Source of the DNA: Podarcis erhardii
Lineage: Eukaryota
Assembly (NCBI GenBank): GCA_964252035.1
Contig: OZ176208.1
Strand: one strand, 5' to 3'
Length of the DNA stretch: 64,000 bases
The notes beneath the pieces were generated by a model. It saw only the letters and a list, made by a program, of their open reading frames with translations. It made no database searches and was not told the DNA's origin. Each line of letters opens with the position of its first letter. The first letter of the stretch is position 1. Position numbers and translations under genes: made by a program. This document shows positions 1,798-61,865 of the stretch, one piece after another.

Positions 1798-2062
1798 AAG
1801 AAGGAAGAAAGAAGAAGAAGAGTTTGGATTTGATATCCCGCCTTTCACTCCCTTTAAGGAGTCTCAAAGCGGCTAACATTATTCTCCTTTCCCTTCCTCC
1901 CCCACAACAAACACTCTGTGAGGTGAGTGGGGCTGAGAGACTTCAAAGAAGTGTGACTGGCCCAAGGTCACCCAGCAGCTGCATGTGGAGGAGCGGAGAC
2001 ACGAACCCGGTTCCCCAGATTAGGAGACTACCGCTCTTAACCACTACACCACACTGGCTCTC
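1798..2062 (-). mobile_element. tRNA-derived SINE, Squam3-like
   Basis: The minus strand starts gagagccagtgtggtgtagtggttaagagcg (A box) with gggttcgtgtctcc (B box), has a CORE-like gggtgaccttgggccagtcac segment and a (CTT)n tail. A near-identical copy lies at 35600-35853. Confidence 0.85.
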
Positions 2063-2876
2063 TAGGTGGGGTATACATGCACTAAATAATATATATGTGT
2101 GGAAGTGGGTCTTAACCTAAAATTGCTATCATGAGAGGAACCAGAAAGTCCATTACTTAAAACACTTTAAAAACAAAGCTAAATTATATATTAGAAGGAG
2201 CAGTTAAATATTTAGGTTCTGGATGACAACAGAAAGCTTATTAAAATCAACTTCCAAGAAGCTGTAGATGAAAATCTCAATCTCTCTCTCTCTGTCCCCC
2301 ATGTGATTGAATGATCCTTGCTATCTCAGAGGAAACTGACATTTTGCTGGTGTTTCATCAGATTAAACCTACCGTGCGTCACATTGTGATAAAGGAAATC
2401 CAGTTCACCTCCAAATATGAATGAAAGTATAGTGTTATAATTTAAATTCTGTTGTAACCATTGACATGCGGGGTTTTTTAAAAAATCAGATTGTGACTTT
2501 TACAGCACAGAAAGAATTCTGGGGCATCCAACTCTGTAGCCTTCAATGCCTGTCAGATGTGATCTTCCTGTGTGTATGAATGAATATGTTAAATCAAAAC
2601 CACACTGGGGTCCAGAAAGTAAAATAACATTCAACACACAACCAAATAAATCTCTATGGGTTGCAATTCCTGCAGCCCAGTTCTGTGCATTATATACTTG
2701 CAAGTAAGTCCCAGTGTATTAAATAGGATTTAACCTGAGTTGAATAGCACTGCCGCCTTAGAATAACTCTGGGAAAGTTCTGAAAATGTGTTCTGACTGA
2801 TCTCTAGGAAATCCAGAGAACCCAAATGTTCAGGCCTCCCTGATATTTTCAATAGTGACATATCGGTTATAGAATC

Positions 2877-3312
2877 ATAGAATCATAGAGTTGGAAGAGA
2901 CCACAAGGGCCATCGAGTCCAACCCCCTGCCAAGCAGGAAACACCATCAGAGCACTCCTGACATATGGTTGTCAAGCCTCTGCTTAAAGACCTCCAAAGA
3001 AGGAGACTCCACCACACTCCTTGGCAGCAAATTCCACTGTCGAACAGCTCTTACTGTCAGGAAGTTCTTCCTAATGTTTAGGTGGAATCTTCTTTCTTGT
3101 AGTTTGGAACCATTGCTCCGTGTCCGCTTCTCTGGAGCAGCAGAAAACAACCTTTCTCCCTCCTCTATGTGACATCCTTTTATATATTTGAACATGGCTA
3201 TCATATCACCCCTTAACCTCCTCTTCTCCAGGCTAAACATGCCCAGCTCCCTTAGCCGTTCCTCATAAGGCATCGTTTCCAGGCCTTTGACCATTTTGGT
3301 TGCCCTCCTCTG
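2877..3312 (-). mobile_element. CR1 LINE 3' end (young, 5'-truncated)
   Basis: ORF 2947-3294 ([32 protein letters not shown]...) is the CR1 ORF2 C-terminus. (ATTCTATG)-type tail. Nearly identical to the 34094 copy. Confidence 0.95.
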
Positions 3313-7845: not shown

Positions 7846-8740
7846 TAGAGGATACCAGGTTGGCAAAGCTGGTCTAGTCTCCTCTCCTTCCATTTTCAGC
7901 CAGGGGAACTACGCAGCTACAGCTGGTGGGTCTGAGGACTGGGACGCAAATGCTGGCAAATCAATGGGAGGGATGAGGGAGGGATGTGGAAATGTGCATA
8001 ACAATTTAGATTGAATTAGAGAGCAAATTAAGCTGTAATGGGCTCCCATTATGCTTATAAAATAGCACAAAGAATTCCAAGTTACAATTTACATTCTGAT
8101 TATTTCAATAGTTTACAAATTGCTGCCAAATGTCCACAAATGTAAATCTCAAATGCAATGAACCAGAGCCGAAACCTCCTCTTAAATGCCTGCAGAATTT
8201 TATCCCCTTTCATTTGTTCTCCCTGCTGCCTATGCAATTACCATCATGTGAGGGGTGTGAAGATAGTGTTAGGTGCCAGAACCTTGGGGCCTGGCATCCT
8301 ACGGCATATTTGCCTTTGCCTCCCACACCCCTTTGCTCTTACCCTCTTGTCTCCACTGAATATTGGGTGGCATGAGATCATACAACCTGGCTTTAATTGC
8401 AATGAAACAGCAAGCGATGAGCAAATTAGCAGCTTCAGAGGAAGTGCCAAACATGCAGGCCATGAAGGATCCTTATCTGGTTCTGCCCACAGAGCCCGTC
8501 CCCTAGCTAAAAGTGACTTTCTCCCTATGATAAATTAAGCTTGAGAGTCAAAGCTAGGCTGCATATCTGCAGCGGGAGCAGCAGAAAGAAGCGAGTCAAA
8601 AACTTGGTCCCCCAACATTTTCCGAGGAAGCTAACGAAAATGCTCACACCTTCCATTGGACCTCAATGAAAAACCTTTCTTCGCTTAGGTGCAGCTATGC
8701 GAGGCAAAAGTGTATTTAAGTAGATCTATTAAAGGTGTTA

Positions 8741-9791
8741 GGGATGCGGGTGACACTGTGGGTTAAACCACAGAGCCTAGGTCTTGCCGATCAGAAGGTC
8801 GGCGGTTCGAATCCCCGCGACGGGGTGAGCTCCCATTGCTCGGTCCCTGCATCTGCCAGGTACCGCTCCGGCGGGAAGGAGGAGCACCAGACTGGAAGGT
8901 GCTCTGGTGCTCAGCAGGATTGTGGCAGAGCACCTTCTGGTCTGGCACAAGGACTCATGCTAGAGCACCAGAACAAAAAATGGGAAATTCCAGAATCCAA
9001 ACAGAAGCCAGGATTGGCTTCGGTGATCCAGGATGTCCCACTTAAAATGGGACACTTAGAGGCAGGTATGGATTTGTTTCCCCAAGATGTAGCAATGGCC
9101 ACCAACTTAGATAGATTTAAGACAGGATGAGACAAATTAGATAAGGTTCTCTGTAGCTACTAACCCTTGTGTCTATGTTCTAGCTCTACCGTCAGAGGCA
9201 TTATGCTGCTTAAAGGCCAGCTGCTGGAAACCAGTCTATAAATTTAATCATATCAAAGCAATTTCCAGTTGCTGGGAATGTTCTGCAGCGGCTCCCAGCT
9301 TATAGAGTGCTCTCCCCAGGGAGGCTTGCCTGGTACCTTCATTACATACTTTAGGGGCCAGGCTAAAATATTCCTATCCTCCCAGGCCTCTGACTAAAGA
9401 AGCTATGGCTTTTAAACTTTTTTTGGGGGGGCGGGCTTTTTTAACATGTTATGCATGTTGGCGTTTTTATATCCTTTAGCACTCTGTGATCCTCAAATGA
9501 AGGGCAGTATAGAAATTTAATGAATAAATGAATGTTGCTGGGTCCCAGCTCCTGCCAACCTAGCAGTTCGAAAGCACGTCAAAGTGCAAGTAGATAAATA
9601 GGTACCGCTCCGGCAGGAAGGTAAACGGCGTTTCTGTGCGCTGCTCTGGTTCGCCAGAAGTGGCTTAGTCATGCTGGCCACATGACCTGGAAGCTGTATG
9701 CCAGCTCCCACAGCCTATAGAGCGAGATGAGCGCTGCAACCCCAGAGTCGGCCACGACTGGACCTAATGGTCAGGGGTCCCTTTACCTTTA
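8741..9791 (+). mobile_element. Chimeric Sauria SINE: SINE 5' head + about 650 bp genomic cargo + SINE 3' part, within a 15-bp TSD
   Basis: TSD ctattaaaggtgtta at 8726-8740 and 9792-9806. tRNA-like head at 8741-8879 (ggttcgaatcc B box). Cargo 8876-9540 is the reverse complement of 42771-43414. SINE body and accttt tail at 9541-9791. Confidence 0.9.
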
Positions 9792-10844
9792 CTATTAAAG
9801 GTGTTAATTAGCCATTTTAAGCTCTGCCACATCTCTTTCATTCTAAGCTCATGGACATAGGGTTTATTGTATTGATGTATCTTTTTCTTTTTTGAATCTA
9901 CTGAAGAATAAAATAAAATAAAATTGGGATTAAGCGGTTTTCTCAGGATAGTGGAAGGTGTGTGTGCCATGACCTTTTGGTGTAGTGGTGATGGAAATGC
10001 TCTGTGGGGAAGGTGTCAAGGAGGAGCCGTTGCAGAGAGTAAACACCCTGAGGAATGCTGGAGTGTACGTTCCTTACCTTTATGGTGTCCATATGTGCTG
10101 TGTCCATCACAGTGCAGGAAAATCCACAGAGGGAAGGGAGGCAGCAGGGGGACACATGGGAGGCCACAGAAGAAATCCCAAAGGGCTGCATGTGACCCCT
10201 GGGCCCCTGGTTCTTGACTTGTGGGCCCTTTTGTCTGATCCAGAAAGGCTCTTGTTTTCCAGTGTTTGCCACTTTCAGCCATGCTCTGCAAATCAGTCAT
10301 CTGCAGAACTATATTTTAAAGTTTAAAAAGAACACATGTGCACCATATTTTATGAAGGCATATTTGCGAAATGGGTCCAGAGAACAGATTCATTTTTATC
10401 TTATAAAAAAACCCCAATCAATGAATAAATAGATGTGCTAAATAATCTGCTCTGAAAGTCTCATGAACATTTATCACATTACATCCCTTAGAATTTTTGC
10501 TCATCGGTTCAGAAATTAAAATGCTTAATCTTTTCCTCTTGAGGTTTTATAAATAGTGGTGCTCTTCCTCAAATGTATCCAATTATTTTTATAATGTGTT
10601 TTATTGAAATATATATTTTAATAAATATGTAAAGTGTAGGTTAAAATACCTATGCATATTCACTGCATTCATAAGAGCTTTAGCTTAGCAGTGCTAATAT
10701 CCTAAGGCCTTTGGAGCAGGAGAATTCATGTATGAAGGAAGTATTTGTATACAAATCAGATCGTGGATTTTTATTTGTGTTATATTTATTTGTATATTTT
10801 CTCCATTATTATATGCTTGTTTCTGGAGCTCATATGGAGGGCTT

Positions 10845-12147: not shown

Positions 12148-12510
12148 CTTCCAGTCAGACATTCCAGCTCTAGTGATTCATCGCCATCTGCTCCTTGTCA
12201 AAGTTGTTTATTACGTAGTTCATCACATCCTCATTAGTCAATCTTTCTCAACACCCGTCCTTTGTTATCAGCCTGTTTGTACGTCCTTTGTTATCGGCCT
12301 GTTTGAAGTCAAGTCTCATGAGTTCAGCACTTCTTCCTCACTTTGCTTGCCAACCTTATCAGTCCCACAAGTCTTAAGGAGACTCCATTTTAGAGTGGTG
12401 TTCTTCAGCCTAAAAACAGGCCCACACTCATTCCTCCATTCATACCATAAATCTCTAATGAATATGATTGTTATTTACACTATTGTACAGTGTACCATTA
12501 CACTAGTGTA

Positions 12511-12736
12511 CAGTGGTACCTCAGGTTACATACGCTTCAGGTTACAGACTCCGCTAATCCAGAAATGGTGCTTCAGGTTAAGAACTTTGCTTCAGGATGA
12601 GAACAGAAATTGTGCTCCGGCGGCGCGGCGGCAGCAGGAGGCCCCATTAGCTAAAGTGGTGCTTCAGGTTAAGAACAGTTTCAGGTTAAGTACGGACCTC
12701 TGGAACAAATTAAGTACTTAACCTGAGGTACCACTG
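12511..12736. mobile_element. Tigger/pogo-like MITE (226 bp)
   Basis: TIRs CAGTGGTACCTCAGGTTA...TAACCTGAGGTACCACTG flanked by TA on both sides. A second copy lies inverted at 33743-33968. Confidence 0.92.
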
Positions 12737-13376
12737 TACATGTCTTTGAACACAAAGCTGTACACTTAATTTATTTTTACTTTAGCTACTAACATACCAC
12801 TCAGTTCCTCAAGTTTCTAAGTGGTGCACATACACATTAGAGAAAGCATAAATTACGGCACTTCCTCATTGCAAAACAACCCACTCTTTCATGAAACAGT
12901 CTTTCTAGAGAAGTTGTAGAGTCTAGGCTTTGACAAACAGGCTGGATGGCTATTATTCAGACCAGCTGCATATACCCCTTCTTAGGGAATGTGGTGGAGA
13001 GGAGCACGGTGGCTCAACTGCAGGCATTGCAAGATGCTGCTGAGACTCATTCCAGTCTGGATTCAGACTTAGACAAATCACCTTTATTGAGAACATGACA
13101 AGGAGAGGGCAGCATTGCTCTTTCTTACTTATGTCTTTGGGGCTTTGGTGTTGACCATGGTAACTGGACCTGCTCCATGGGATGGGTAACAGCGGCACTG
13201 CGTCACAGTGGCTTTAGCCCTACTTATGCAGCCAACTCCCAAGAAAAGCATTGGAAGAGTATTCTCTCTCCCCCCCCCAACATTGAGGTTCTGTGGGCTC
13301 TAATTTCCCCCCATTGCTATTGAATACCAGTAATCAATTGCTGTTGGGAGTGGCTAGTAGAATTCAGGGCAAGGTG

Positions 13377-18845: not shown

Positions 18846-19891
18846 TGTCACGGGCAGTGGGAGTCCCGGCTTGGTACGTCAGGACCGGGGTAGAGGTTGG
18901 GAAGCAGGAATCAGCAGTCCAGGGTAAGCAGTCCAGGAGTCAGGAAGCCAAGAGTCCAAGGGTCAGCAGTCCAAGGGTCAGGAAGCCAAGTGTCCACGAA
19001 TCAGGAAACCAGGAGTCAGGAAGCCAAGAGTCCATGAATCAGGAAACCAGGAGTCAGGAAGCCAGGAGTCCATGAATCAGGAAACCAGGAGTCAGGAAGC
19101 CAAGAGTCCACGAATCAGGAAACCAGGAGTCAGGAAGCCAGGAGTCCATGAATCAGGAAACCAGGAGTCAGGAAGCCAAGAGTCCACGAATCAGGAAACC
19201 AGGAGTCAGGAAGCCAAGAGTCCACGAATCAGGAAACCAGGAGTCAGGAAGCCAAGAGTCTGAGGGTCAGGAAACCAGGAGTCAGGAAGCCAGGAGTCCA
19301 CGAAGCAGGAAACCAGGAGTCAGGAAGCCAAGAGTCCATGAATCAGGAAACCAGGAGTCAGGAAGCCAAGAGTCCATGAATCAGGAAACCAGGAGTCAGG
19401 AAGCCAAGAGTCCACGAATCAGGAAACCAGGAGTCAGGAAGCCAAGAGTCTGAGGGTCAGGAAACCAGGAGTCAGGAAGCCAGGAGTCCACGAATCAGGA
19501 AACCAGGAGTCAGGAAGCCAGGAGTCCACGAATCAGGAAACCAGGAGTCAGGAAGCCAAGAGTCCACGAATCAGGAAACCAGGAGTCAGGAAGCCAAGAG
19601 TCTGAGGGTCAGGAAACCAGGGGTCAGGAAGCCAGGAGTCCAAGAGTCAGGATACCAGGAGTCACGAAGCCGAAGCACAGCTAGGTGGGCAGCATGTTGC
19701 CATGGCAAAGAGCCAGAGGGAAATGCCAATCTTATCTACCCCTCCCAGCCCTTGCCATCAGGTGCTATGTGTCTTCTGCCAAGCCTCACCTGTGCGGCCG
19801 CGCCTTGCCCTTCCAGGCCAAACTCAGGAACGCCCCAGTCCTGCGAGGCCCTACCAATCACAGGGCCTGGCTCCTTCCCGCACTCCTGACA
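18846..19891. mobile_element. Solo LTR (TG...CA) with 5-bp TSD, containing an expanded minisatellite
   Basis: Starts TGTCACGGG and ends CTCCTGACA. TSD ccctg at 18841-18845 and 19892-19896. Confidence 0.85.
18965..19665. repeat. 38-bp minisatellite, 17 full units plus partial flanking units
   Basis: aggaaaccaggagtcaggaagcca(a/g)gagtcca(c/t)gaatc recurs every 38 bp from 19003 to 19611. Confidence 0.97.
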
Positions 19892-27172: not shown

Positions 27173-29014
27173 AACTCATTGACATCTGATGAAGCTGAAT
27201 ATTGGAAGATACAAGGCAGAGATGGGTGGCTTTAAAAGAGGATTAGACAAATCCATGGGGGAAAGAGACTATTAAAAGCTACTAGCTACCGTGCCTATTC
27301 TCTGCCTCCACAGTTGAAGGCAGTAATGCTTCTGAATACCCATTGCTGGAAACTTCAGGAGCGTGCTATTCTACTCAGGTCCTGCTTGTGAGTTTCTCAG
27401 AAGCATCAGACAGAAAACACTGAGGGAACAGGATTCTGTAGTAGATGACGCACTAGTCTGATCGAGGATGCATGGGGGTGGGATGGAGAAAGGATTTGGA
27501 TCTCATCACATTCCTAGTGGTGATATTATCATATAATTGTAGAGTTGGAAGTGTTTCCAAAGGTCATTTAGTTCAACTTCTTGCACTGCAGGAATCTCAA
27601 CACGCAGTCTCCCATCCAGTTTGAAACCATACAAGACCCTGCTTAGCTTTGCAAATGTGCTAGCGGTTTTATTGCTGCACCACTCATGTATTGTTCCATC
27701 ATGGAACATAAGGCATTGTAATGTGGTTCTCAGGCAAGCTTCCTTGCAGGCACTGACCTGTTTAGCTTCCACGAAGTGGTGGTCTCATATAATCAGTCTA
27801 TGCATTGGGGCCTATACTGGGAGTGCAATGTGTTCGGAATTTAACATGCAAAAAATTAAGTCAGGCCCAGTTTTTCTTAGAAAATAGCGTGGTTTGCCCT
27901 TCCAAATTGAGCCAAAAGGTTATTAAATAAATATTTGATCAGATCAAAGCAATCTGGAAAATCTCAATTATTGTCTATATTATCTATATTGCTCTAAGTC
28001 CACAAGTATGGACCAGTACACAGACAATGATATACCTGATGTTGGGGATTCTGTGGCTCTGCAGATGTCATTGGACCCCATCATCCTTTAGCATTGATCA
28101 TCCCAGATGGAGGAGGGCTACAGGTTCTCCATCTGTCATATACATTTCACAATATGCAGGGTACTGGTGTATCCCCATAGATAAAGTCCATAGGAACAAT
28201 ACAGTTCTGTAACACTCCTCTAGCATATCTACAAACTACATTACACCTGGAACAAAGATACTACTGACTTTAAAACTCTGTAATAACATAAAGATTGATT
28301 AGCAAATTGTAGTTGTAGCAGAGGTGCCTTAAACAAAGTTATTTGTTGCTGGCAGGCTTTCACAAATGAATATATTGGCGAGGGTCATGTATGTAAATAT
28401 GAAAGTGGATGTACTTAGGGCCTCATTTATTAGGAGGAGAATAAAAACAAATTTAATTGGTTCTTTGGCATTAATTTATTTTTCTTTATTATATATATTG
28501 ATTAGCTGGAGTCATATCATGGTCAGAAATTGATTCCTGCTTAGAATCATTTAAGACTTTGGCATTTATTTGATCCACCACTGCATTCTGACGTCTCTCT
28601 AATGAGTTATTGTAATTTGCTTTTGAAGATATAGATTCCAGAATGTTTTGTTTAATTATGTCTTCCCCTTCTGCACACCTCAATGAATTCTTCCTTTTGT
28701 AAAAGATAAATGTTTCTGAATTTTTCAAGAAACTGCTTGCTGAGATTAGAAAAATGGCTTCTTATTTTCCCTTCTGTGAAGGAATGAGATACATTTTGAC
28801 ATATTGGCTACACCATTATCTCAACATCAAATCTATTTCAGATTGAATATGCAACAATCCATTATTCAGAATGGCAGTAAGCAACATGACTTGGGGCGGG
28901 GGAACACCAATATACTGCTCCCAAAAATCTGTTCCATCCATTAAGCATTACAGCTGAAAGTTCAGAAACCCTAGAGCACTTTCACCAAGCATTTGCCTCC
29001 ATGTAAGGCATCCA

Positions 29015-29375
29015 GGGACGTGGGTGGCGCTGTGGGTTAAGCCTAGGACTTGCTGATCAGAAGGTCAGCAGTTCTAATCCCTGCAGCGGGGTGAGCTCCC
29101 GTTCCTCGGTCCCTGCTCCTGCCAACCTAGCAGTTTGAAAGCACGTCAAAGTGCAAGTAGATAAATAGGTACCACTCTGGCAGGAAGGTAAACGGCATTT
29201 CCGTGCACTGCTCTGGTTCGCAAGAAGCGGCTTAGTCATGCTGGCCACATGACCCGGAAGCTGTACGCCGGCTCCCTCGGCCAATAAAGCGAGATGAGCG
29301 CCACAACCCCATAGTTGGTCACGACTGGACCTAATGATCAGGGGTCCCTTTACCTTTACCTTTACCTTTACCTTT
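29015..29375 (+). mobile_element. Full-length Sauria SINE
   Basis: gggacgtgggtggcgctgtgggttaa head and (ACCTTT)n tail. TSD-like taaggcatcca/taaggcataca. Confidence 0.95.
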
Positions 29376-33425: not shown

Positions 33426-33742
33426 AGGGCCCTGACCTCATTTTAAGTAGCTCCCAGCAGTGCCTGAAATGTCCCCATTCTTCAGTCTCATCAGAGTGTC
33501 TTTCTTCCTGTTCATTTCCTCCTTATTTCTTCTGGCATTTAAAGTATTCCCCCCACCCTTTTAATATTTCTTCTTTTCCTTTTTCTGGTTGTATAGTTTG
33601 GGGGAAGGTTTTCCTTCAACTGTCTGAACAAGCGGATGGGCTTCTGTCATAAGTGGAGTGTGACAAGGGATGAGTGAATCTGTTAATTTCAGTTTTCGTT
33701 ATCAGTTTTTCTTTTTCCCTGCCTTATGTTTAGTTTGCTATA

Positions 33743-33968
33743 CAGTGGTACCTCAGGTTAAGTACTTAATTCGTTCCGGAGATCCGTTCTTAACCTGAAA
33801 CTGTTCTTAACCTGAAGCACCACTTTAGCTAATGGGGACTCCTGCTGCCGTCGCGCCACCTGAGCACGATTTCTGTTCTCATCCTGAAGCAAAGTTCTTA
33901 ACCTGAAGCACTATTTCTGGGTTAGCGGAGTCTGTAACCTGAAGCATATGTAACCCAAGGTACCACTG
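33743..33968. mobile_element. Tigger/pogo-like MITE (226 bp), second copy
   Basis: Same TIRs and TA flanks as 12511-12736, in the opposite orientation. Confidence 0.92.
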
Positions 33969-34093
33969 TATTTCCATTTTGTGATACCCTCCCCATGAGA
34001 AATCCTCATGAAGATTTCTCAAAATTTTTGCAAGCAGCTCTGTCTGACCTAATGTTGTATGTTATGTTCTTTAATATATGCATATTTATACAT

Positions 34094-34993
34094 AGAATAG
34101 AATCATAGAGTTGGAAGAGACCACAAGGGCCACCGAGTCCAACCCCCTGCCAAGCAGGAAACACCATCAGAGCACTCCTGACATATGGTTGTCAAGCCTC
34201 TGCTTAAAGAGCTCCAAAGAAGGAGACTCCACCACACTCCTTGGCAGCAAATTCCACTGTCGAACAGCTCTTACTGTCAGGAAGTTCTTCCTAATGTTTA
34301 GGTGGAATCTTCTTTCTTGTAGTTTGGAACCATTGCTCCGTGTCCGCTTCTCTGGAGCAGCAGAAAACAACCTTTCTCCCTCCTCTATGTGACATCCTTT
34401 TATATATTTGAACATGGCTATCATATCACCCCTTAACCTCCTCTTCTCCAGGCTAAACATGCCCAGCTCCCTTAGCCGTTCCTCATAAGGCATCGTTTCC
34501 AGGCCTTTGACCATTTTGGTTGCCCTCCTCTGGACCCGTTCCAGTTTGTCAGTGTCCTTCTTGAACTGTGGTGCCCAGAACTGGACACAGTACTCCAGGT
34601 GAGGTCTGACCAGAGCAGAATACAGTGGCACTATTACTTCCCTTGATCTAGATGCAATACTCCTATTGATGCAGCCCAGAATTGCATTGGCTTTTTTAGC
34701 TGCCGCGTCACACTGTTGGCTCATGTCAAGTTTGTGGTCAACCAAGACTCCTAGATCCTTTTCACATGTACTGCTCTCCAGCCAGGTGTCACCCGTCTTG
34801 TATTTGTGCCTCTCATTTTTTTTGCCCAAGTGCAATACTTTACATTTCTCCCTGTTAAAATTCATCTTGTTTGTTTTGGCCCAGTTCTCTAATCTGTCAA
34901 GGTCGTTTTGAAGTGTGATCCTGTCCTCTGGGGTGTTAGCCACCCCTCCCAGTTTGGTGTCATCTGCAAATTTGATCAGGATGCCCTTGAGTC
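34094..34993 (-). mobile_element. CR1 LINE 3' fragment (young) with an open 258-aa ORF2 C-terminus
   Basis: ...LIKFADDT just upstream, then ANTPEDRITLQNDLDRLENWAK...KCKVLHLG...PHLEYCVQFWAP...; (ATTCT)-type tail. Confidence 0.97.
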
Positions 34994-35189
34994 CTAGGAT
35001 ACGCTAGGATACCCTAGCGTATGCATTCTTGTACACATTACTTTTTGGTGATCTTCATTGCAAAATTCGAAGAAGTGTGAATTTGGAAAGAATGGCTGTG
35101 TTTCAGTTCACATATTGTTTTGGGAAATGTGAATGAACTGAACTGGATTTCTTTTCCATTCTTAAAGGCTTATTCACACTTCCTATTGT

Positions 35190-35430
35190 CCTGCCAACCT
35201 AGCAGTTTGAAAGCACGCCAAAGTGCAAGTAGATAAATAGGTACCGCTCTGGCAGGAAGGTAAATGGCGTTTCCGTGTGCTGCTCTGGTTCACCAGAAGT
35301 GGCTTAGTCATGCTGGCTACATGACCCAGAAGCTGTATGCCGGCTCCCTCAGCCAGTAAAGTGAGATGAGCGCTGCAACCCCAGAGTCGTCCGCGACTGG
35401 ACCTAACGGTCAGGGGTCCCTTTACCTTTT
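35190..35430 (+). mobile_element. 5'-truncated Sauria SINE
   Basis: ctgccaacctagcagtttgaaagcacg...ggggtccctttacctttt. TSD-like tattgtcctgc/tatcgtcctgc. Confidence 0.92.
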
Positions 35431-35599: not shown

Positions 35600-35853
35600 G
35601 AAGAGGAGAAGAAGAGTTTGGATTTGATATCCCGCCTTTCACTCCCTTTAAGGAGTCTCAAAGCGGCTAACATTCTCCTTTCCCTTCCTCCCCCACAACA
35701 AACACTCTGTGAGGTGAGTGGGGCTGAGAGACTTCAGAGAAGTTTGACTGGCCCAAGGTCACCCATCAGCTGCATGTGGAGGAGCGGAGACATGAACCCG
35801 GTTCCCCAGATTATGAGACTACCGCTCTTAACCACTACACCACACTGGCTCTC
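35600..35853 (-). mobile_element. Squam3-like SINE, second copy
   Basis: Near-identical to 1798-2062. Confidence 0.85.
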
Positions 35854-37495
35854 TGGTCAGTCGGTGACCATTTTGGCTCAGGCTTACCATCTTTCTTTTC
35901 TCATGATATAATTTACACTTTCCCTCATTTATAATAGCTCAACCCTCCATCCTCCCCAAAAGTGTATGGCTCCTAAAACATCCCGGCCCAAAGGTGTGCT
36001 GACTTTAGATCCCAGTGTGCTTTATACTCCTCTGCAAAATGCCCCCCCCCCATCTCTCTCCTCAGTGAGTCACAACATTAACTCATCACAAGCCTCAGCG
36101 GCTTTCCCCCTGCAGATTGACGAGAGCTCTCAGCCATGCGTTTCCCTCTGAATTACCACCAATGCAATGTGAAAAGAACAAGGTTCCTCATGTAATAAAT
36201 CATGACAGTCTTCCTGTGAATGTAATGTGTGACTGTGCTTCCAAGCCCTAATCCATAAGTTACCATGGTGATCGGGTGTCAGCCAGAGCTCGCTTCCTCA
36301 TGTCGCAACAGTAATATATGCTGACAGCCGCCATATGGATCACCTGAATTTGGGTGGTTAGGCCCCACACTAATGCTGAACCTCTGTTTGGAGCTGCGGG
36401 GCTGGAAACTCTATGGGGTGACCCATATAGCTGCAGGTTGCATTAAAGAGTGCTTCAGTGGGAAGCCCCAGCCACAAAGAAATGAATTTTGAGCAGCAAT
36501 GATGTTGCCATGGTGATGGATGAATCAGGCCCATGAGAGGAGTTTTTCTCTCTCTTCCTTTTCTTTTCAGGAGACAATGATAAGAGAGATTATTATGGGT
36601 CTGATCACCTAATAAGTGTGTTTTTTAAGTGACAAAAAAAGAGACTGAACCTATTTCTTATGCCGTGCTTCCAGTGACGATGGCGTTGATTATGAGTGTG
36701 GCGGCAGGAGAAATACTTCCACTACAGGCTGAGCAGAATTTTATGCACTTTAGACAGGATAAAAATGAGATGAACGCGTTAATGATTTTAAAAGCTATCG
36801 GAACCTCAGCTTGACAAATGAAGTGAATCGCTCAAAATGGAATGTGTTAACATTAAGAGTGCAGTTGCAAGATGTAGGCCAGATTAAGGAATCCATCTGC
36901 TGTGGGGATGCAAACCTGTCTTGCCTTATCGTGGAGTTTGAATGAAGTTATGTATTCAACGGCTGACATATTTGCATCACCATCTCTCATTGGTTGGCTC
37001 TCAGCAATGCACGTTCTTTTGATCTTGGTTTGCCATCTGTAACACTGCAGTAGTAATCACCCACCCACAAAGTTGTTTGGGGGAGCAAATGGAATAGTTA
37101 ATGCAAAGTCCTTTTATTTGTGTGTGTGTAAATTACAGGGCTTTTTTAAAAAAGCATGTGATTCTTGCTCTGTCCATTGACAGAGCTATGTGCATGTAGC
37201 GCCACCTGAATAATCAAGGGGGTTATTGCTTTCGTTTGTTACTATGTTACACATTTTGGTTTTTTAAATTTTTAAACTGCCCTGTGATCCTTGAATGAAG
37301 GGCAGTATAGGAATTTAAATAGAAATAAAGAAACAGTTTTTTTCCCAAATGCATAAATTCCCCATCAGACACCCCATGCTAAAAGAAAGAAAAAAATCCA
37401 CATGAACACAAAGCATGCTTACACCCTGTATCAGTGAGAGTTTCTCCATTGGCACCTGTAGCCCTTGCACCCGTGTAAATCCTGCACCCATGTAA

Positions 37496-37939
37496 TGTTA
37501 AGATTCCTGCTCCGTGATTGCAGTCATGGGATTGTTGTCTATCACATGACGGTGTATGTTTTGACTCAACAGAGCGGGAAGTGATGGAGACAGGATGTTT
37601 GTGTTACTGTATTCCGCGAAGTGGGACTATTGTCCTTTGTTCTCTCTCCTTTGCTGTCTGATGAGAGAGAGGAAGGAGCTAAGTCAGAATGCTCTGAGTG
37701 TATTGTATGTAAATAAACGTAGATTAGCTAAATGCTGAGCTACTGAGTTCTGTTACACGAACTGCGCAAACTCTGCGGATCCCTAAGTGTGCCAATGTCT
37801 GTTGGCATCAGTCGCTGTGATGTTCAGGCTGAAGAAAGCTTTTGAAGCTCTCGAACGATCAGCCCAGAGGGAGAGAAAATGCCAGTCGGGCATGTGTCTC
37901 TCCCAGGGTCCTACTTGAGAGTAGGGTGAGCTCCTGACC
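37496..37939 (+). mobile_element. Solo LTR-like element
   Basis: TGTTAAGATTCC...CTCCTGACC with TSD tgtaa (37491-37495, 37940-37944) and an internal AATAAA. Homologous to 43417-43854 and 55539-55625. Confidence 0.75.
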
Positions 37940-42520: not shown

Positions 42521-42777
42521 AAAGGTAAAGGGACCCCTGACCATTAGGTCCAGTCGTGGCCGACTCTGGGGTTGCGGCGCTCATCTTGCTTTATTGGCCG
42601 AGGGAGCCGGTGTACAGCTTCTGGGTCATGTGGCCAGCATGACTAAGCCACTTCTGGCGAACCAGAGCAGCGCACGGAAACGCCGTTTATCTTCCCGCCG
42701 GAGCAGTACCTATTTATCTACTTGCACTTGACGTGCTTTCGAACTGCTAGGTTGGCAGGAACTGGGACCCAGCAACA
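42521..42777 (-). mobile_element. 5'-truncated Sauria SINE
   Basis: aaaggtaaagggacccctgaccattaggtccagtcg... through ...gggacccagcaac. Confidence 0.95.
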
Positions 42778-43414
42778 TTCATTTATTCATTAAATTTCTA
42801 TACTGCCCTTCATTTGAGGATCACAGAGTGCTAAAGGATATAAAAACGCCAACATGCATAACATGTTAAAAAGTTTAAAAGCCATAGCTTCTTTAGTCAG
42901 AGGCCTGGGAGGAGAGGAATATTTTTGCCTGGCCCCTAAAGTATGTAATGAAGGTACCAGGCAAGCCTCCCTGGGGAGAGCACTCTATAAACTGGGAGCT
43001 GCTGCAGAACATTCCCAGCAACTGGAAATTGCTTTGATATGATTAAATTTATAGACTGGTTTCCAGCAGCTGGCCTTTAAGCAGCATAATGCCTCTGACG
43101 GTAGAGCTAGAACATAGACACAAGGGTTAGTAGCTACAGAGAACCTTATCTAATTTGTCTCATCCTGTCTTAAATCTATCTAAGTTGGTGGCCATTGCTA
43201 CATCTTGGGGAAACAAATCCATACCCGCCTCTAAGTGTCCCATTTTAAGTGGGACATCCTGGATCACCAAAGCCAATCCTGGCTTCTGTTTGGATTCTGG
43301 AATTTCCCATTTTTTGTTCTGGTGCTCTAGCATGAGTCCTTGTGCCAGACCAGAAGGTGCTCTGCCACAATCCTGCTGAGCACCAGAGCACCTTCCAGTC
43401 TGGTGCTCCTCCTT
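42771..43414 (-). repeat. Inverted dispersed duplicate of 8876-9540
   Basis: Six substitutions and one 20-nt indel over about 645 bp by eye. The ORF track shows matching 74-aa ORFs at 8911-9135 (-) and 43155-43379 (+). Confidence 0.97.
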
Positions 43415-43416
43415 GG

Positions 43417-43854
43417 TGTTAGAATTCCTGATCTATGATTGCAGTCATGGGATTATTGTCTTTCACATGATGGTATGTTTTGACTCCACAGAGTGGGAAC
43501 TGACAGAGACAGGATGTTTGTATTACTGTGTTCCGTGAAGTGGGACTATTGTCCTTTGTTTTTTTTCTCTTTGCTGTCTGATGCTTAAAAGCGAGGGAGC
43601 CATGTTGCAGTGCTCCGTGTGTGTTTATATGTAAATAAAGTAGATTAGCCAAAATGCTGAGTTGCTGAGGTCTGTCACGCACAAGTTGTGAAGACTTTGC
43701 GGATCCCTAAGTGTGCTGGTGTTGGTTGGCATCGGTCGTTGTGATGTTCGGGCAGAGGAAAGCTTATGAAACTCCCGATCGACCAGGAAGGAGGGAACAT
43801 GCCAGTCAGCCATGTTTCTCTGCCAGGGTCCTACTCGAGTGTAGGCTGTTGACA
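43417..43854 (+). mobile_element. Solo LTR-like element (same family as 37496)
   Basis: TGTTAGAATTCC...TGTTGACA with an internal AATAAA. No matching TSD. Confidence 0.75.
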
Positions 43855-55078: not shown

Positions 55079-55538
55079 GCATTGCATCTTGGAGTTTACT
55101 CTGCCTCAAGATGTACTCAAGGACCTCAGTTTCTATAACTCTCACCCTGCCCAGCACCATCTATATTACTTCACTCAAGCCTGTGATGTTGGAAGGCTGA
55201 CAGTTCAGTCATGTACATTGTCTACTCAGAAGTCCCAATGAGCTCACTGGGCCTTAGTCCCAGGAAAGCAAGTATAAGATTGCAGCCTCGGTGTATTTTC
55301 CCTGAACCTTTCTGAGCATTGCAGACCAGGTGGGGGGGGGAGGTTTTAAAGAGGAGAATTAGAGGTTTGTCTGTTGGAGTTTTAAATTTATTCAAAAGAG
55401 GGCTAAGAAGCTGCTTTACTTACAACCAAATCTGATACACCTTTCTAAGAAGAGAAAAACATGTCTGCATGGCATAAACACAGAGCCCAGAAAGCTGTAC
55501 TAGACTGAGTCAGACCATTGGTGAATTGAACTCAGTAT

Positions 55539-55625
55539 TGTTAGAATTCCTACTCCGTGGTTGCAGTCATGGGATTTTTGTCCTTCACATGATGTATGTT
55601 TTGACTCCACAAAGTGGGAAGTGAC
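55539..55625 (+). mobile_element. 87-bp LTR 5' fragment (37496/43417 family)
   Basis: tgttagaattcctactccgtggttgcagtcatggg...aagtgac, flanked by gtat direct repeats. Confidence 0.8.
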
Positions 55626-59275: not shown

Positions 59276-60687
59276 TCCAAGTCTCCATGCAATGAGACTT
59301 GGTAGGAACAAAAGCAGGTTGCCAAACGATGAGTTTGAGATCTTTAACATTTCCCTCAAGTACATAGGGGTAAGACCTCGGACTAAGCCTTTTCTGTTTC
59401 CTAAAATTAATACAAGGAAGTGCTTGCACTCTCACACACCTAGTTTTTGTGATGCCCGAAATAGTAACAGACTTTCTTTGAGGCTACAGATTCAGTATTC
59501 CCCCGGGTATGCCCTACCAGGAGGGTCCATGACTGCTATGCCAAGGTTCAAGTCTCTATTATGGTGCTACTAATTCACCAAGGAATCTAAGGCTTATGTT
59601 AAGAGAAAGATGAAAGCTCGGAAGAATTGCTGGTGCTTCTGGAAACTAACTGTAGTAATTCTCTGAAAGATGATAGCCCTTTCTCCTCATGCCATTACGA
59701 AAAGCCATTACACAACTAAACTTAGCCCAGAGACATACATGTCTGCCGGGGCTTCAGTTACGCGTTTAGAATACGTTCGCGGTTCGCAGGCTTTCTTGAA
59801 AGAAATGTGTCTAATAGTGACCCTCAGGCCATCTCTCCCTGGGACTGCCGAATCCTGTTAGTGCTTTAATGTCTTAGAGAAATTGCTGAAGTTTTCTAAT
59901 CTGTCCCAAACCATCTTTCACTAGCAATAATGATGACACTGATTTAGAGTGTTTGACAGGCAGTACTTGTGAAGATTTTTATTTTTTAAAAAATAATTTT
60001 ATGACGTTAGTATTGGCGAGTCGAGTTTGGATAACATGGCCTTGGCCTAATAAGAAACATAAATGAAGTATTAGTCGCAATGTCCTTTCTTCTTGGGGGA
60101 TTGGGGGGTGTTTAGAATTTGTAGTGGGATTTTAGTCTTCGTAATCACAACTTGAAGAGATCATTCTCCTTTATGAATCAAAACATGAATTCTGGTGGCT
60201 ATTTGAAAAAAGCTGATAGGTTTTGTAGTGTGTGGGGGTTGTTGTTTTTTGCTTCCATCAAAGAATGAAATATAAATAGCATATGTGGAAACTGACATTT
60301 GCATACTGTCCAGCGTCTACAGACAAGCCTGGGTGCTATCCCCACTTATATTGCTCTGTATTTATTTAGCATTCAGCAGTCTACCGAGAGCTGACTTCTG
60401 AAGCAGGCATGTGAATAAAACAGCCACTCCAAGATTCCATTTCTAAAACTTGAGGATGGTATAACTTCATAAAAGGATCTGATTCTATTTAGCTGCAACT
60501 TGACTGTGGAATGAGAGTGGCAAAGAGATTTGAGTGTCAAACTAGGAATGGGGAGACCCATGTTCAAATCTTGACTCGGTCATCATGTGATTGCTGTTTT
60601 ATTGTATTTGGAGGGGAGGGGAAGCCTCAGTTTCAAAGAAGTACCTGTATCATTGGCAAGATTTCTCTTGGCTAGCTGAGCTAATAG

Positions 60688-60930
60688 GTAAAGGTAAAGA
60701 GACCCCTGACCATTAGGTCCAGTCGCGGACGACTCTGGGGTTGTGGCGCTCATCTCACTTTATTGGCCAAGGGAGCCGGCGTACAGGTTCTGGGTCACGT
60801 GGCCAGCATGACTAAGCCACTTCTGGCAAACCAGAGCAGCACATGGAAACGTCGTTTACCTTCCTGCTGGAGCGGTACCTATTTATCTACTTGCACTTTG
60901 ACGTGCTTTCGAACTTCTAGGTTGGCAGTT
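60688..60930 (-). mobile_element. 5'-truncated Sauria SINE
   Basis: ggtaaaggtaaagagacccctgaccattagg...ctaggttggcag, flanked by tgagctaat. Confidence 0.92.
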
Positions 60931-61865
60931 GAGCTAATTAGCTCGATTGAGCTAATATAAAATAAATGAATGAAATTGATTAAGGTCTATGCAGTTACTG
61001 TGTGAAAAGCACCTGAATTAGTCACGATGCCAACAATGCAAGGATATTGACTGGTGTCATTAACTGAATAATCACACTTCATATAGTTGAGTTTTATATG
61101 TGGAATGTCACTTGGAAATGCCATGTTTCTCATTCGGGAGATGGATGCAGATCATGCATTTGCATGTTTGTCGTTTTCATGTTGAAAAGCTAGCTTTGCA
61201 GAACACCTTATTTTAAAAAGGGACAACAGAGGCAAGCCTAGGTATGAAAGGTGGGCCGATGCAAACAAGGACAGGGCTCCTGCTCATTCAGTCATTGTGT
61301 AGCAGGAGATGTAGGGATTTCAGTAGGCTAGCAGGTCTTGTACTCTACACCTGCAGAAATTTCCTTCTCTGCTGCTACACAGCTATTCAAGGTGTAGGAG
61401 CTTGTTCAAAATAATAAAAACAAGGAAAAACAAAACAAACCCAAGTTTCAGGTTGCAGCTCCTTATTTCATTTTTATTTTTACTACAATTTGCTGTCCTG
61501 AGCATCATATTTCCTTGAGTTTTCACTGATCCTATGAAAGTCCAGTGGGGTCCTTTACAGAAAATGATTTGAGGAAAGCATACATTTCCTTTCCCCCTTG
61601 ATCTTTGGATAGCAGTCAAGGCTGCATACTCTTCTGAGAATGTTCTCACATCTTGTTCCGTTTTCGGACAATGGAAAAGCATCCAGACAGATGCAAATTG
61701 TGTTAACATCTGTGTCCCTCCAGATGTTTCAGGACTGCAGCATCCATCATCCCTGACCATTGGCCCTGCTGGCTAGGGCTGATGGGAGCCGGGAGTACAT
61801 CAACCTATGGAGAGAGCCACAGGTTCCTCACTCATGAGATTTGTAGATCTGCTGACGTTTCTGGA

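What the first reader, a model, noticed from the sequence alone, without database searches (positions are those of the whole stretch)
8726..9806. TSD-flanked chimeric Sauria SINE carrying about 650 bp of genomic DNA copied from 34 kb away
Seen in sequence: one 15-bp TSD (ctattaaaggtgtta) encloses a SINE 5' head with an approximately 43-bp internal deletion, then about 650 bp of non-SINE DNA, then a SINE 3' part. The non-SINE DNA is the reverse complement of 42771-43414, the flank of another, 5'-truncated Sauria SINE. It contains CR1 and L2 remnants, so it looks like ordinary genomic mosaic rather than a TE. The left junction has AAGG microhomology, and the SINE segment ggtaccgctccggc.ggaagg occurs twice. 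By-eye divergence is asymmetric: 6 substitutions and one 20-nt indel in about 645 bp of cargo, versus 16 substitutions and 1 indel in about 250 bp of SINE. About 11 of the 16 are at CpG sites, which weakens but does not remove the asymmetry. Inference: SINE homology primed an ectopic templated insertion (SDSA/MMBIR-like) into an existing SINE. The alternative is an RNA-level 5' transduction with template switching by BovB/RTE machinery. Either would be a SINE-driven route for local DNA duplication.
Basis: partly seen in the sequence, partly recalled or inferred. Interest (0 to 1): 0.72.

Follow-up and report, generated by a model that had tools for sequence, protein, structure and literature searches.

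The report
Broken SINE patched from neighbouring SINE
A lizard SINE carries about 650 bases of ordinary DNA copied from beside another SINE 34 kb away, most likely through sloppy repair of a DNA break; this is a clean example of a known process, and the scan has already seen it elsewhere in this genome.

Summary
An exact 15-bp target duplication (8726-8740 and 9792-9806) encloses a Sauria SINE head, 658 bp of non-SINE DNA and a SINE tail. Positions 8876-9790 match the reverse complement of 42521-43414 at 95.3%, with AAGG microhomology at the left joint.

Locus B (42.5-43.4 kb) is the donor. Its cargo is a mosaic of old repeats and runs into an old repeat that is absent from locus A. T4-T7 runs in the cargo argue against spread as a Pol III composite element.

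A two- to three-fold excess remains after weighting for CpG, so this test does not settle the mechanism.

The strongest discriminator is proximity. A random retrocopy would land within 34.6 kb of its source about 5 times in 100,000, whereas ectopic repair favours nearby donors.

My odds:
- DNA-level templated patch into an existing SINE: about 0.6
- RNA template-switch chimera: about 0.2
- Multi-copy element or third locus: about 0.1
- Assembly artefact: about 0.05

The scan found the same kind of event before on other DNA of this genome (s1-263199, s1-232468, s1-214987).

The parts
8726..8740 (+). 5' copy of the 15-bp target site duplication
   Evidence: Exact repeat of 9792-9806 and the only two occurrences in the window. 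TTT lies at 8715-8717, about 10 nt upstream, and TA at 8727-8728. This fits the Tn-TA signature published for Sauria SINEs (PMC13295347).
8741..8858 (+). SINE head, from the family's 5' end to about consensus position 128
   Evidence: Aligns with the full-length copy at 29014-29359. The B-box-like GGTTCGAATCC is read directly at 8805-8815.
8859..8879 (+). 21-22 nt SINE segment (GGTACCGCTCCGGCGGGAAGG). Either the head continuing after a 43-bp deletion, or a short templated filler.
   Evidence: Direct repeat of 9600-9621. 43 alignment columns are missing before it. It ends in AAGG, which B's flank also has.
8880..9534 (+). Cargo: non-SINE DNA copied from locus B
   Evidence: 6 substitutions and one 20-nt indel against 42776-43410 on the minus strand. 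It holds fragments of old repeats and T4-T7 runs at 9410, 9418, 9437 and 9464.
9418..9437 (+). 20-nt G-rich insertion inside a T run, private to A
   Evidence: Absent from B and from the old relative at 37.2 kb. The motif GGGGGGGCGGGC is unique in the window.
9535..9791 (+). SINE tail, from about consensus position 112 to the (ACCTTT)n end
   Evidence: Its first 14 nt carry B's private variants (CTGGG, CCCAG). The rest is 16 substitutions and 1 indel from B.
9688..9735 (+). 48-bp patch holding 11 of the 16 tail differences, 8 of them private to A
   Evidence: Unexplained.
9792..9806 (+). 3' copy of the target site duplication
42521..42775 (-). Donor locus B: 5'-truncated Sauria SINE with no detectable target duplication
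42776..43414 (-). Donor locus B: original copy of the cargo, including the AAGG (CCTT on the plus strand at 43411-43414)
43417..43848 (+). Old repeat X next to the end of the cargo at B. It is absent from A and marks B as the original context.
   Evidence: 80.6% identical to 37496-37928 and 88.6% to 55539-55625. The copy at 37483-37939 has an exact 9-bp duplication TGTAAATCC.

Best explanation
A full-length Sauria SINE had inserted at 8741 by ordinary Bov-B-type target-primed reverse transcription, which made the 15-bp duplication. Later the SINE suffered a DNA break in its middle.

The right-hand end paired with a young, nearly identical, inverted SINE 34 kb away on the same chromosome (locus B) and primed DNA synthesis. 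The new strand then came off and was joined to the left-hand end through AAGG microhomology.

A second parsing puts the break at 8858. In that case a 22-nt SINE filler was added first and joined through 1 nt of microhomology, and no separate 43-bp deletion is needed.

The product is head + flank of B + tail inside the original duplication, with the donor left unchanged. The architecture, the direction and the microhomology are shown. The break, the earlier plain SINE and the DNA rather than RNA nature of the copying are inferred.
For: - **One insertion site.** A single exact duplication sits at the true 5' and 3' ends of the SINE. The target fits the published Tn-TA signature.
- **Nearby donor.** The donor lies in cis 34 kb away. 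Random reinsertion that close has a probability of about 5e-5 in a 1.4-1.5 Gb genome. Non-allelic conversion between SINEs falls off with distance (PMC8230782). 75% of Alu/Alu-mediated deletions are under 57 kb (PMC6071635).
- **Joint types.** One junction lies in SINE homology and the other in 4-nt microhomology.
- **B is the original.** B keeps its natural context, where old repeat X meets the cargo end. The cargo is a mosaic of old repeats.
- **Tail looks independent.** The tail is two- to 3.6-fold more diverged than the cargo after CpG weighting. The A and B tails share no private states and are nearly as far apart as independent copies: 11+4 differences against 12-16 + 5-9. This fits A keeping its own tail.
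- **Only such pair in the window.** The other young repeat pairs all end at clean transposon ends.
- **Unchecked leads.** Sister cases are noted in this genome, including MITEs that cannot pass through RNA.
Against: - No allele or sister species with a plain SINE at this site could be examined.
- CpG-column divergence is the same in cargo and tail (30% and 29%). The last 55 bp of the tail are identical in A and B. That is what copying cargo and tail together would give, including by RNA.
- The crossover point inside the SINE cannot be located.
- The cargo's copy number in the genome is unknown.
- The residual asymmetry leans on a cluster of three substitutions within 11 bp.
Confidence: 0.6

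Rival explanations
1. RNA-level chimera made in one retroposition. The Bov-B reverse transcriptase started on a read-through transcript of locus B that ended in B's SINE tail. It copied the tail and 650 nt of upstream flank, then switched at AAGG to a SINE RNA. It copied that RNA to its 5' end, skipping 43 nt, and the product integrated with one target duplication.
For: - One duplication encloses the whole unit.
- The A/B homology stops exactly at the SINE's 3' end.
- Head and tail have the same orientation.
- CpG-column divergence is the same in cargo and tail, and the last 55 bp are identical.
- Template-switch chimeras with double jumps are documented for LINE enzymes (PMC2104539 and 10.1101/2025.02.02.635956).
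- The scan has noted other duplication-flanked chimeric retroposons in this genome (unchecked).
Against: - Landing 34 kb from the source has a probability of about 5e-5, and no local bias is known for LINE-driven insertion.
- It needs a Pol II transcript of B's minus strand, for which there is no evidence. Pol III would stop at the T5 runs in the cargo, and B has no SINE head to promote it.
- Non-CpG divergence is higher in the tail than in the cargo (p = 0.03).
- Two switches are needed.
Confidence: 0.2
2. The cargo plus SINE tail belongs to a multi-copy composite element or a repeatedly duplicated segment. A and B are then two copies of a third source, not donor and recipient.
For: - The cargo's copy number could not be measured.
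- Two copies in one 64-kb window could reflect abundance.
- Three of the Sauria copies in the window (B, D, E) start near the same internal SINE position.
Against: - T4-T7 runs in the cargo would end Pol III transcription.
- The cargo is a mosaic of unrelated old repeat fragments.
- B has no target duplication and its cargo end sits in a natural old-repeat context.
- Only two copies occur in the window.
- A metagenome scan with a 26-mer found nothing; this carries little weight.
Confidence: 0.1
3. Assembly artefact: a second haplotype of locus B was wrongly joined into the SINE at A.
For: - The cargo divergence (0.9% plus one indel) is within the range of allelic variation.
- SINEs are frequent sites of misjoins.
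- No reads could be laid.
Against: - The left joint has only 4 nt of shared sequence, so an overlap-based misjoin is not expected there.
- The tail differs from B by 6%, well above allelic levels.
- The unit sits precisely inside an exact duplication.
Confidence: 0.05

Closest known systems
Alu/Alu-mediated rearrangement by template switching (MMBIR or MMEJ) in humans (PMC6071635)
   Same: Two diverged SINE copies in cis, tens of kb apart, serve as the substrate. One joint lies inside SINE homology and leaves a chimeric SINE. Microhomology is present.
   Different: The described cases are mostly deletions or duplications between directly oriented Alus. Here the SINEs are inverted and the outcome is a short insertional copy (about 650 bp) that returns to the original locus. 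The second joint lies outside any SINE.
Non-allelic (partial) gene conversion between SINE copies (PMC8230782)
   Same: A break in one SINE is repaired from another. Nearby copies are preferred. The results are hybrid elements.
   Different: Ordinary conversion stays within the homologous element. Here synthesis overran the donor's truncated end into unique flank, and the repair was closed by end joining. Sequence was gained as well as replaced.
Synthesis-dependent strand annealing with one-sided homology and end-joining closure, known from transposon gap repair and filler DNA (from established knowledge; review PMC7407515 listed but not read)
   Same: Invasion through homology on one side, copying of donor flank, dissociation, and a microhomology joint on the other side. 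Short fillers and small insertions at re-priming sites also fit.
   Different: Here it is seen as a fixed natural event in a retroposon, not at an excision gap of a DNA transposon.
LINE-mediated template-switch chimeric retrocopies and 5' transduction (PMC2104539; 10.1101/2025.02.02.635956)
   Same: One target duplication around two fused sequences in the same orientation. The 3' part ends in the tail that the LINE enzyme recognises.
   Different: Those chimeras land unlinked to their sources. Here the source is 34 kb away, the source SINE has no promoter-bearing head, and the cargo holds Pol III terminators.
Earlier cases in this scan: s1-263199 (SINE, 18 kb, inverted), s1-232468 and s1-214987 (MITEs, 18 and 27 kb)
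   Same: A repeat carries part of a sister copy plus that copy's flank, taken from 18-27 kb away in the same genome.
   Different: This case has the longest flank (about 650 bp against 110-201 bp) and the largest distance. The earlier notes were not checked here.

Membership tests
Sauria SINE (Bov-B-mobilised) | tRNA-related 5' head with internal Pol III promoter boxes | tested here: inconclusive
   GGTTCGAATCC is read directly at 8805-8815, and the head aligns with the full-length copy at 29014. ARAGORN calls no tRNA and Rfam gives no tRNA match.
Sauria SINE (Bov-B-mobilised) | 3' end terminating in (ACCTTT)n | tested here: met
   The element ends CCCTTTACCTTTA at 9779-9791. The feature is taken from PMC13295347.
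Sauria SINE (Bov-B-mobilised) | Target duplication with the Tn-TA signature (TTT about 10 nt upstream; the duplication starts T/TA) | tested here: met
   TTT at 8715-8717; the duplication reads C-TATTAAAGG from 8726. The C may belong to an ACCTTT unit, which would make a 14-bp duplication starting TA. Signature.
Repeat-primed ectopic repair or template switching (SDSA/MMBIR, Alu/Alu-type) | One junction inside homology between two copies of the repeat | tested here: inconclusive
   The first 14 nt of the tail carry B's variants and A returns to consensus from 9549. The crossover cannot be fixed, because both SINEs were near consensus at the time.
Repeat-primed ectopic repair or template switching (SDSA/MMBIR, Alu/Alu-type) | Microhomology at the non-homologous junction | tested here: met
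   AAGG is shared by 8876-8879 and 43411-43414.
Repeat-primed ectopic repair or template switching (SDSA/MMBIR, Alu/Alu-type) | Donor nearby in cis and left intact | tested here: met
   The donor is 34 kb away on the same contig, and B keeps its natural old-repeat context.
Repeat-primed ectopic repair or template switching (SDSA/MMBIR, Alu/Alu-type) | Recipient existed beforehand as a plain repeat copy | not testable with these tools
LINE template-switch chimeric retrocopy / 5' transduction | A single target duplication around fused parts in the same orientation, with a LINE-recognised 3' tail | tested here: met
LINE template-switch chimeric retrocopy / 5' transduction | Source locus transcribed through the flank in the sense of the element | not testable with these tools
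   No RNA data. B lacks a SINE head, and the cargo has T5 runs that would stop Pol III.
LINE template-switch chimeric retrocopy / 5' transduction | Insertion site independent of the source's position | tested here: not met
   Source and copy are 34 kb apart, with a chance of about 5e-5 under random reinsertion.

The most novel reading that the evidence does not exclude
Repeat-primed local patching may be a recurrent, distance-limited process in this lacertid genome. It would copy hundreds of bases of unique DNA between sister repeats 18-34 kb apart. This locus, another SINE, two MITEs and a Bov-B element have been flagged in 679 windows. If so, it would be a measurable source of small dispersed duplications, and its donor-distance spectrum might reflect chromatin-contact scale.
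Probability: 0.2. Interest if true: 0.55.

Novelty: new member of a known kind. Interest (0 to 1): 0.33.

Why it matters
This is a well-preserved natural example of how interspersed repeats let break repair go astray and duplicate a neighbour's flank. Both junctions, the donor and the original target duplication are still legible. It also matters for annotation and phylogenetics: such a unit looks like a composite SINE or a transduction and could be miscalled as a new element family. A single case does not change what is known about repair. A genome-wide census with donor distances would give the rate and range of the process in a reptile.

Tried and rejected
- **Reads.** That left no depth-based copy number, no long-read check and no other haplotypes.
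- **Orthologous loci.** Exact look-up of ten ORFs in and around both loci found none in the protein collection, so the protein route to orthologous loci failed.
- **Metagenome scan.** A scan with a 26-mer from the cargo gave no hit.
- **Genes in the window.** All ORFs of 110 aa or more that resemble known proteins look transposon-derived and there is no CpG island. Transcription of locus B could not be judged.
- **B as a 5'-truncated retrocopy of A.** Rejected: B has no target duplication, and its truncation would have to coincide with A's head/cargo joint.
- **Wider duplication between 1.8-12.7 kb and 33.7-43.4 kb.** Rejected: the three other young pairs are a CR1 3' end, a tRNA-type SINE and a TA-flanked MITE, each ending at clean element ends.
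- **Repeat X as an LTR promoter for a B transcript.** Not supported by anything in the sequence.
- **Divergence dating.** It could not separate the models.

Full report
**What is there**

- The 15-mer CTATTAAAGGTGTTA occurs only twice in the 64-kb window, at 8726-8740 and 9792-9806.
- Between the two copies lie four pieces:
  - A Sauria SINE head that starts at the family's 5' end (8741). It runs to 8858 and then lacks 43 columns that every other copy has.
  - A 21-22 nt SINE segment, 8859-8879, repeated at 9600-9621.
  - About 655 bp of non-SINE DNA, 8880-9534.
  - A SINE tail, 9535-9791, ending in ACCTTT units.
- Positions 8876-9790 align to the reverse complement of 42521-43414 at 95.3% over 915 columns.
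The cargo has 6 substitutions and a 20-nt indel. The tail has 16 substitutions and a 1-nt indel, and 11 of the 16 lie in CpG columns.
- At the left joint, AAGG is shared by the SINE segment and by B's flank.
- The target fits the signature published for Sauria SINEs (PMC13295347). TTT lies about 10 nt upstream, TA sits at the start of the duplication, and the element has an (ACCTTT)n end.

**Direction of copying**

- At locus B the homology stops at 43414. That is 2 nt from the sharp start (TGTTAG, 43417) of an old repeat, X. X has two more copies in the window, at 80.6% and 88.6% identity.
- One of those copies has an exact 9-bp duplication. That places the repeat's true end 13 nt further out. 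The first 11 nt or so of the cargo may therefore be the end of X.
- X is far older than the A/B split and is absent from A.
- The cargo holds fragments of at least two other old repeat families and two L2-like 3' ends.
- B has no target duplication of its own.
- B is therefore the original context and A the recipient.
- The cargo carries T4-T7 runs on the sense strand. From established knowledge of Pol III termination, these would stop a transcript started in the SINE head. A self-propagating composite SINE is therefore unlikely.

**Divergence**

  - CpG columns differ at 3/10 in the cargo and 11/38 in the tail.
  - Non-CpG columns differ at 3/625 and 5/217 (p = 0.03). Three of the five tail sites lie within 11 bp.
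  - With CpG columns weighted 8- to 20-fold, the tail is 2.0- to 3.6-fold more diverged than the cargo, with p between 0.004 and 0.12.
- In the region shared by five Sauria copies, A and B differ at 11 CpG and 4 other columns. Plainly independent pairs differ at 12-16 and 5-9. A and B share no more non-consensus states than any other pair.
- Together this leans towards A having kept its own tail. The last 55 bp are nevertheless identical in A and B, and the numbers are small.
- All the events (both SINE insertions and the copying) have about the same CpG-decay depth. That fits ectopic repair, which works best between young, near-identical copies. It fits an RNA event during SINE activity equally well.
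- Eleven of the 16 tail differences sit in 48 bp (9688-9735), and 8 of them are private to A. I cannot explain this cluster.
- A also has a private 20-nt G-rich insertion inside a T run. B and an old relative both lack it. This could be a slip made during copying.

**Mechanism**

- Both the DNA and the RNA routes account for the single duplication, the microhomology and the homology ending at the SINE's 3' end.
- What separates them is position. A retrocopy landing at random would fall within 34.6 kb of its source about 5 times in 100,000, assuming a 1.4-1.5 Gb lacertid genome from general knowledge.
- Repair templates are chosen preferentially nearby.
  - Alu-Alu conversion falls off with distance (PMC8230782).
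  - 75% of mapped Alu/Alu-mediated deletions are under 57 kb (PMC6071635).
- The RNA route also needs a Pol II transcript of B's minus strand and two template switches.
- I therefore favour a break in a pre-existing SINE at A. The break would have been repaired by invasion of the inverted SINE at B, overrun into B's flank, and closure by microhomology.
- A second parsing avoids a separate 43-bp deletion:
  - break at 8858;
  - a 22-nt templated filler joined through 1 nt of microhomology;
  - a switch at AAGG into B's flank;
  - a return into SINE homology near 9549, where A goes back to consensus while B has T.
- This parsing is an inference and has not been shown.

**Context in the window and in the scan**

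- The other young repeat pairs in the window are a CR1 3' end at 99.5%, a tRNA-type SINE at 96.5% and a TA-flanked MITE at 93.9%. Each ends at clean element boundaries. The A/B pair is the only duplication that crosses a transposon boundary.
- The scan's earlier notes list the same kind of event elsewhere in this genome:
  - a SINE patched from an inverted sister 18 kb away, with 111 bp of intron (s1-263199);
  - two MITEs patched from 18 and 27 kb away (s1-232468, s1-214987);
  - a Bov-B element carrying flank from 30 kb away (s1-254851).
- I did not check these notes, so they are leads only. The MITE cases cannot involve RNA, and the distances match.

**Limits**

- ORF look-ups and a metagenome scan were blank.
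- As a result, copy number, assembly correctness and the state of the site in other haplotypes or species remain untested.

**Verdict**

This is a real, well-preserved event of a known kind and ordinary in mechanism. It is the largest example of its type that the scan has noted in this genome. Its value would lie in a census more than in the single case.

Noticed in passing
window 43417-43848, 37483-37939, 55527-55625: An old repeat family of about 450 bp (X) starting TGTTAG and holding an AATAAA. The copy at 37483-37939 has an exact 9-bp duplication TGTAAATCC. At locus B the copied tract ends within about 11 nt of this repeat's terminus.
   Followed up: partly
window 9688-9735: A cluster of 11 A/B differences in 48 bp of the SINE tail, 8 of them private to A. 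The flanking tail is nearly identical, and the last 55 bp have no difference at all.
   Followed up: partly
window 9418-9437: A 20-nt G-rich insertion inside a T run, private to A. It is absent from the donor and from an old relative at 37.2 kb, and may be a slip made during copying.
   Followed up: partly
window 2877-3312 and 34097-34532: Two CR1 3' ends 99.5% identical (2 mismatches in 436 bp). The longer copy carries a 258-aa open frame (34167-34943, minus strand). This points to a very young, possibly active CR1 lineage.
   Followed up: no
window 12509-12738 and 33741-33970: A pair of 230-bp MITEs at 93.9% identity, with terminal inverted repeats (CAGTGGTACCTCAGGTTA...) and TA flanks, consistent with a Tc1/mariner-type MITE.
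   Followed up: partly
window 1810-2063 and 35604-35854: Two copies (96.5% identical) of a different tRNA-headed SINE on the minus strand, each preceded by a GAA-rich stretch.
   Followed up: partly
window 18916-19675: A tandem array with a period of about 38 bp and copies about 91-93% alike, seen as a ladder of self-matches.
   Followed up: no
window 8887-8945: A 20-nt inverted repeat (90% complementary, 19-nt loop) at the start of the cargo. It gives only a weak, sub-threshold match to a microRNA precursor model (20.5 bits against a gathering score of 70), which is probably chance.
   Followed up: partly
window 35189-35429, 60682-60935, 42521-42775: Three of the five Sauria-type copies in the window are 5'-truncated within about 20 nt of each other (consensus positions about 112-131). 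This suggests a preferred stop or a headless sub-lineage.
   Followed up: no
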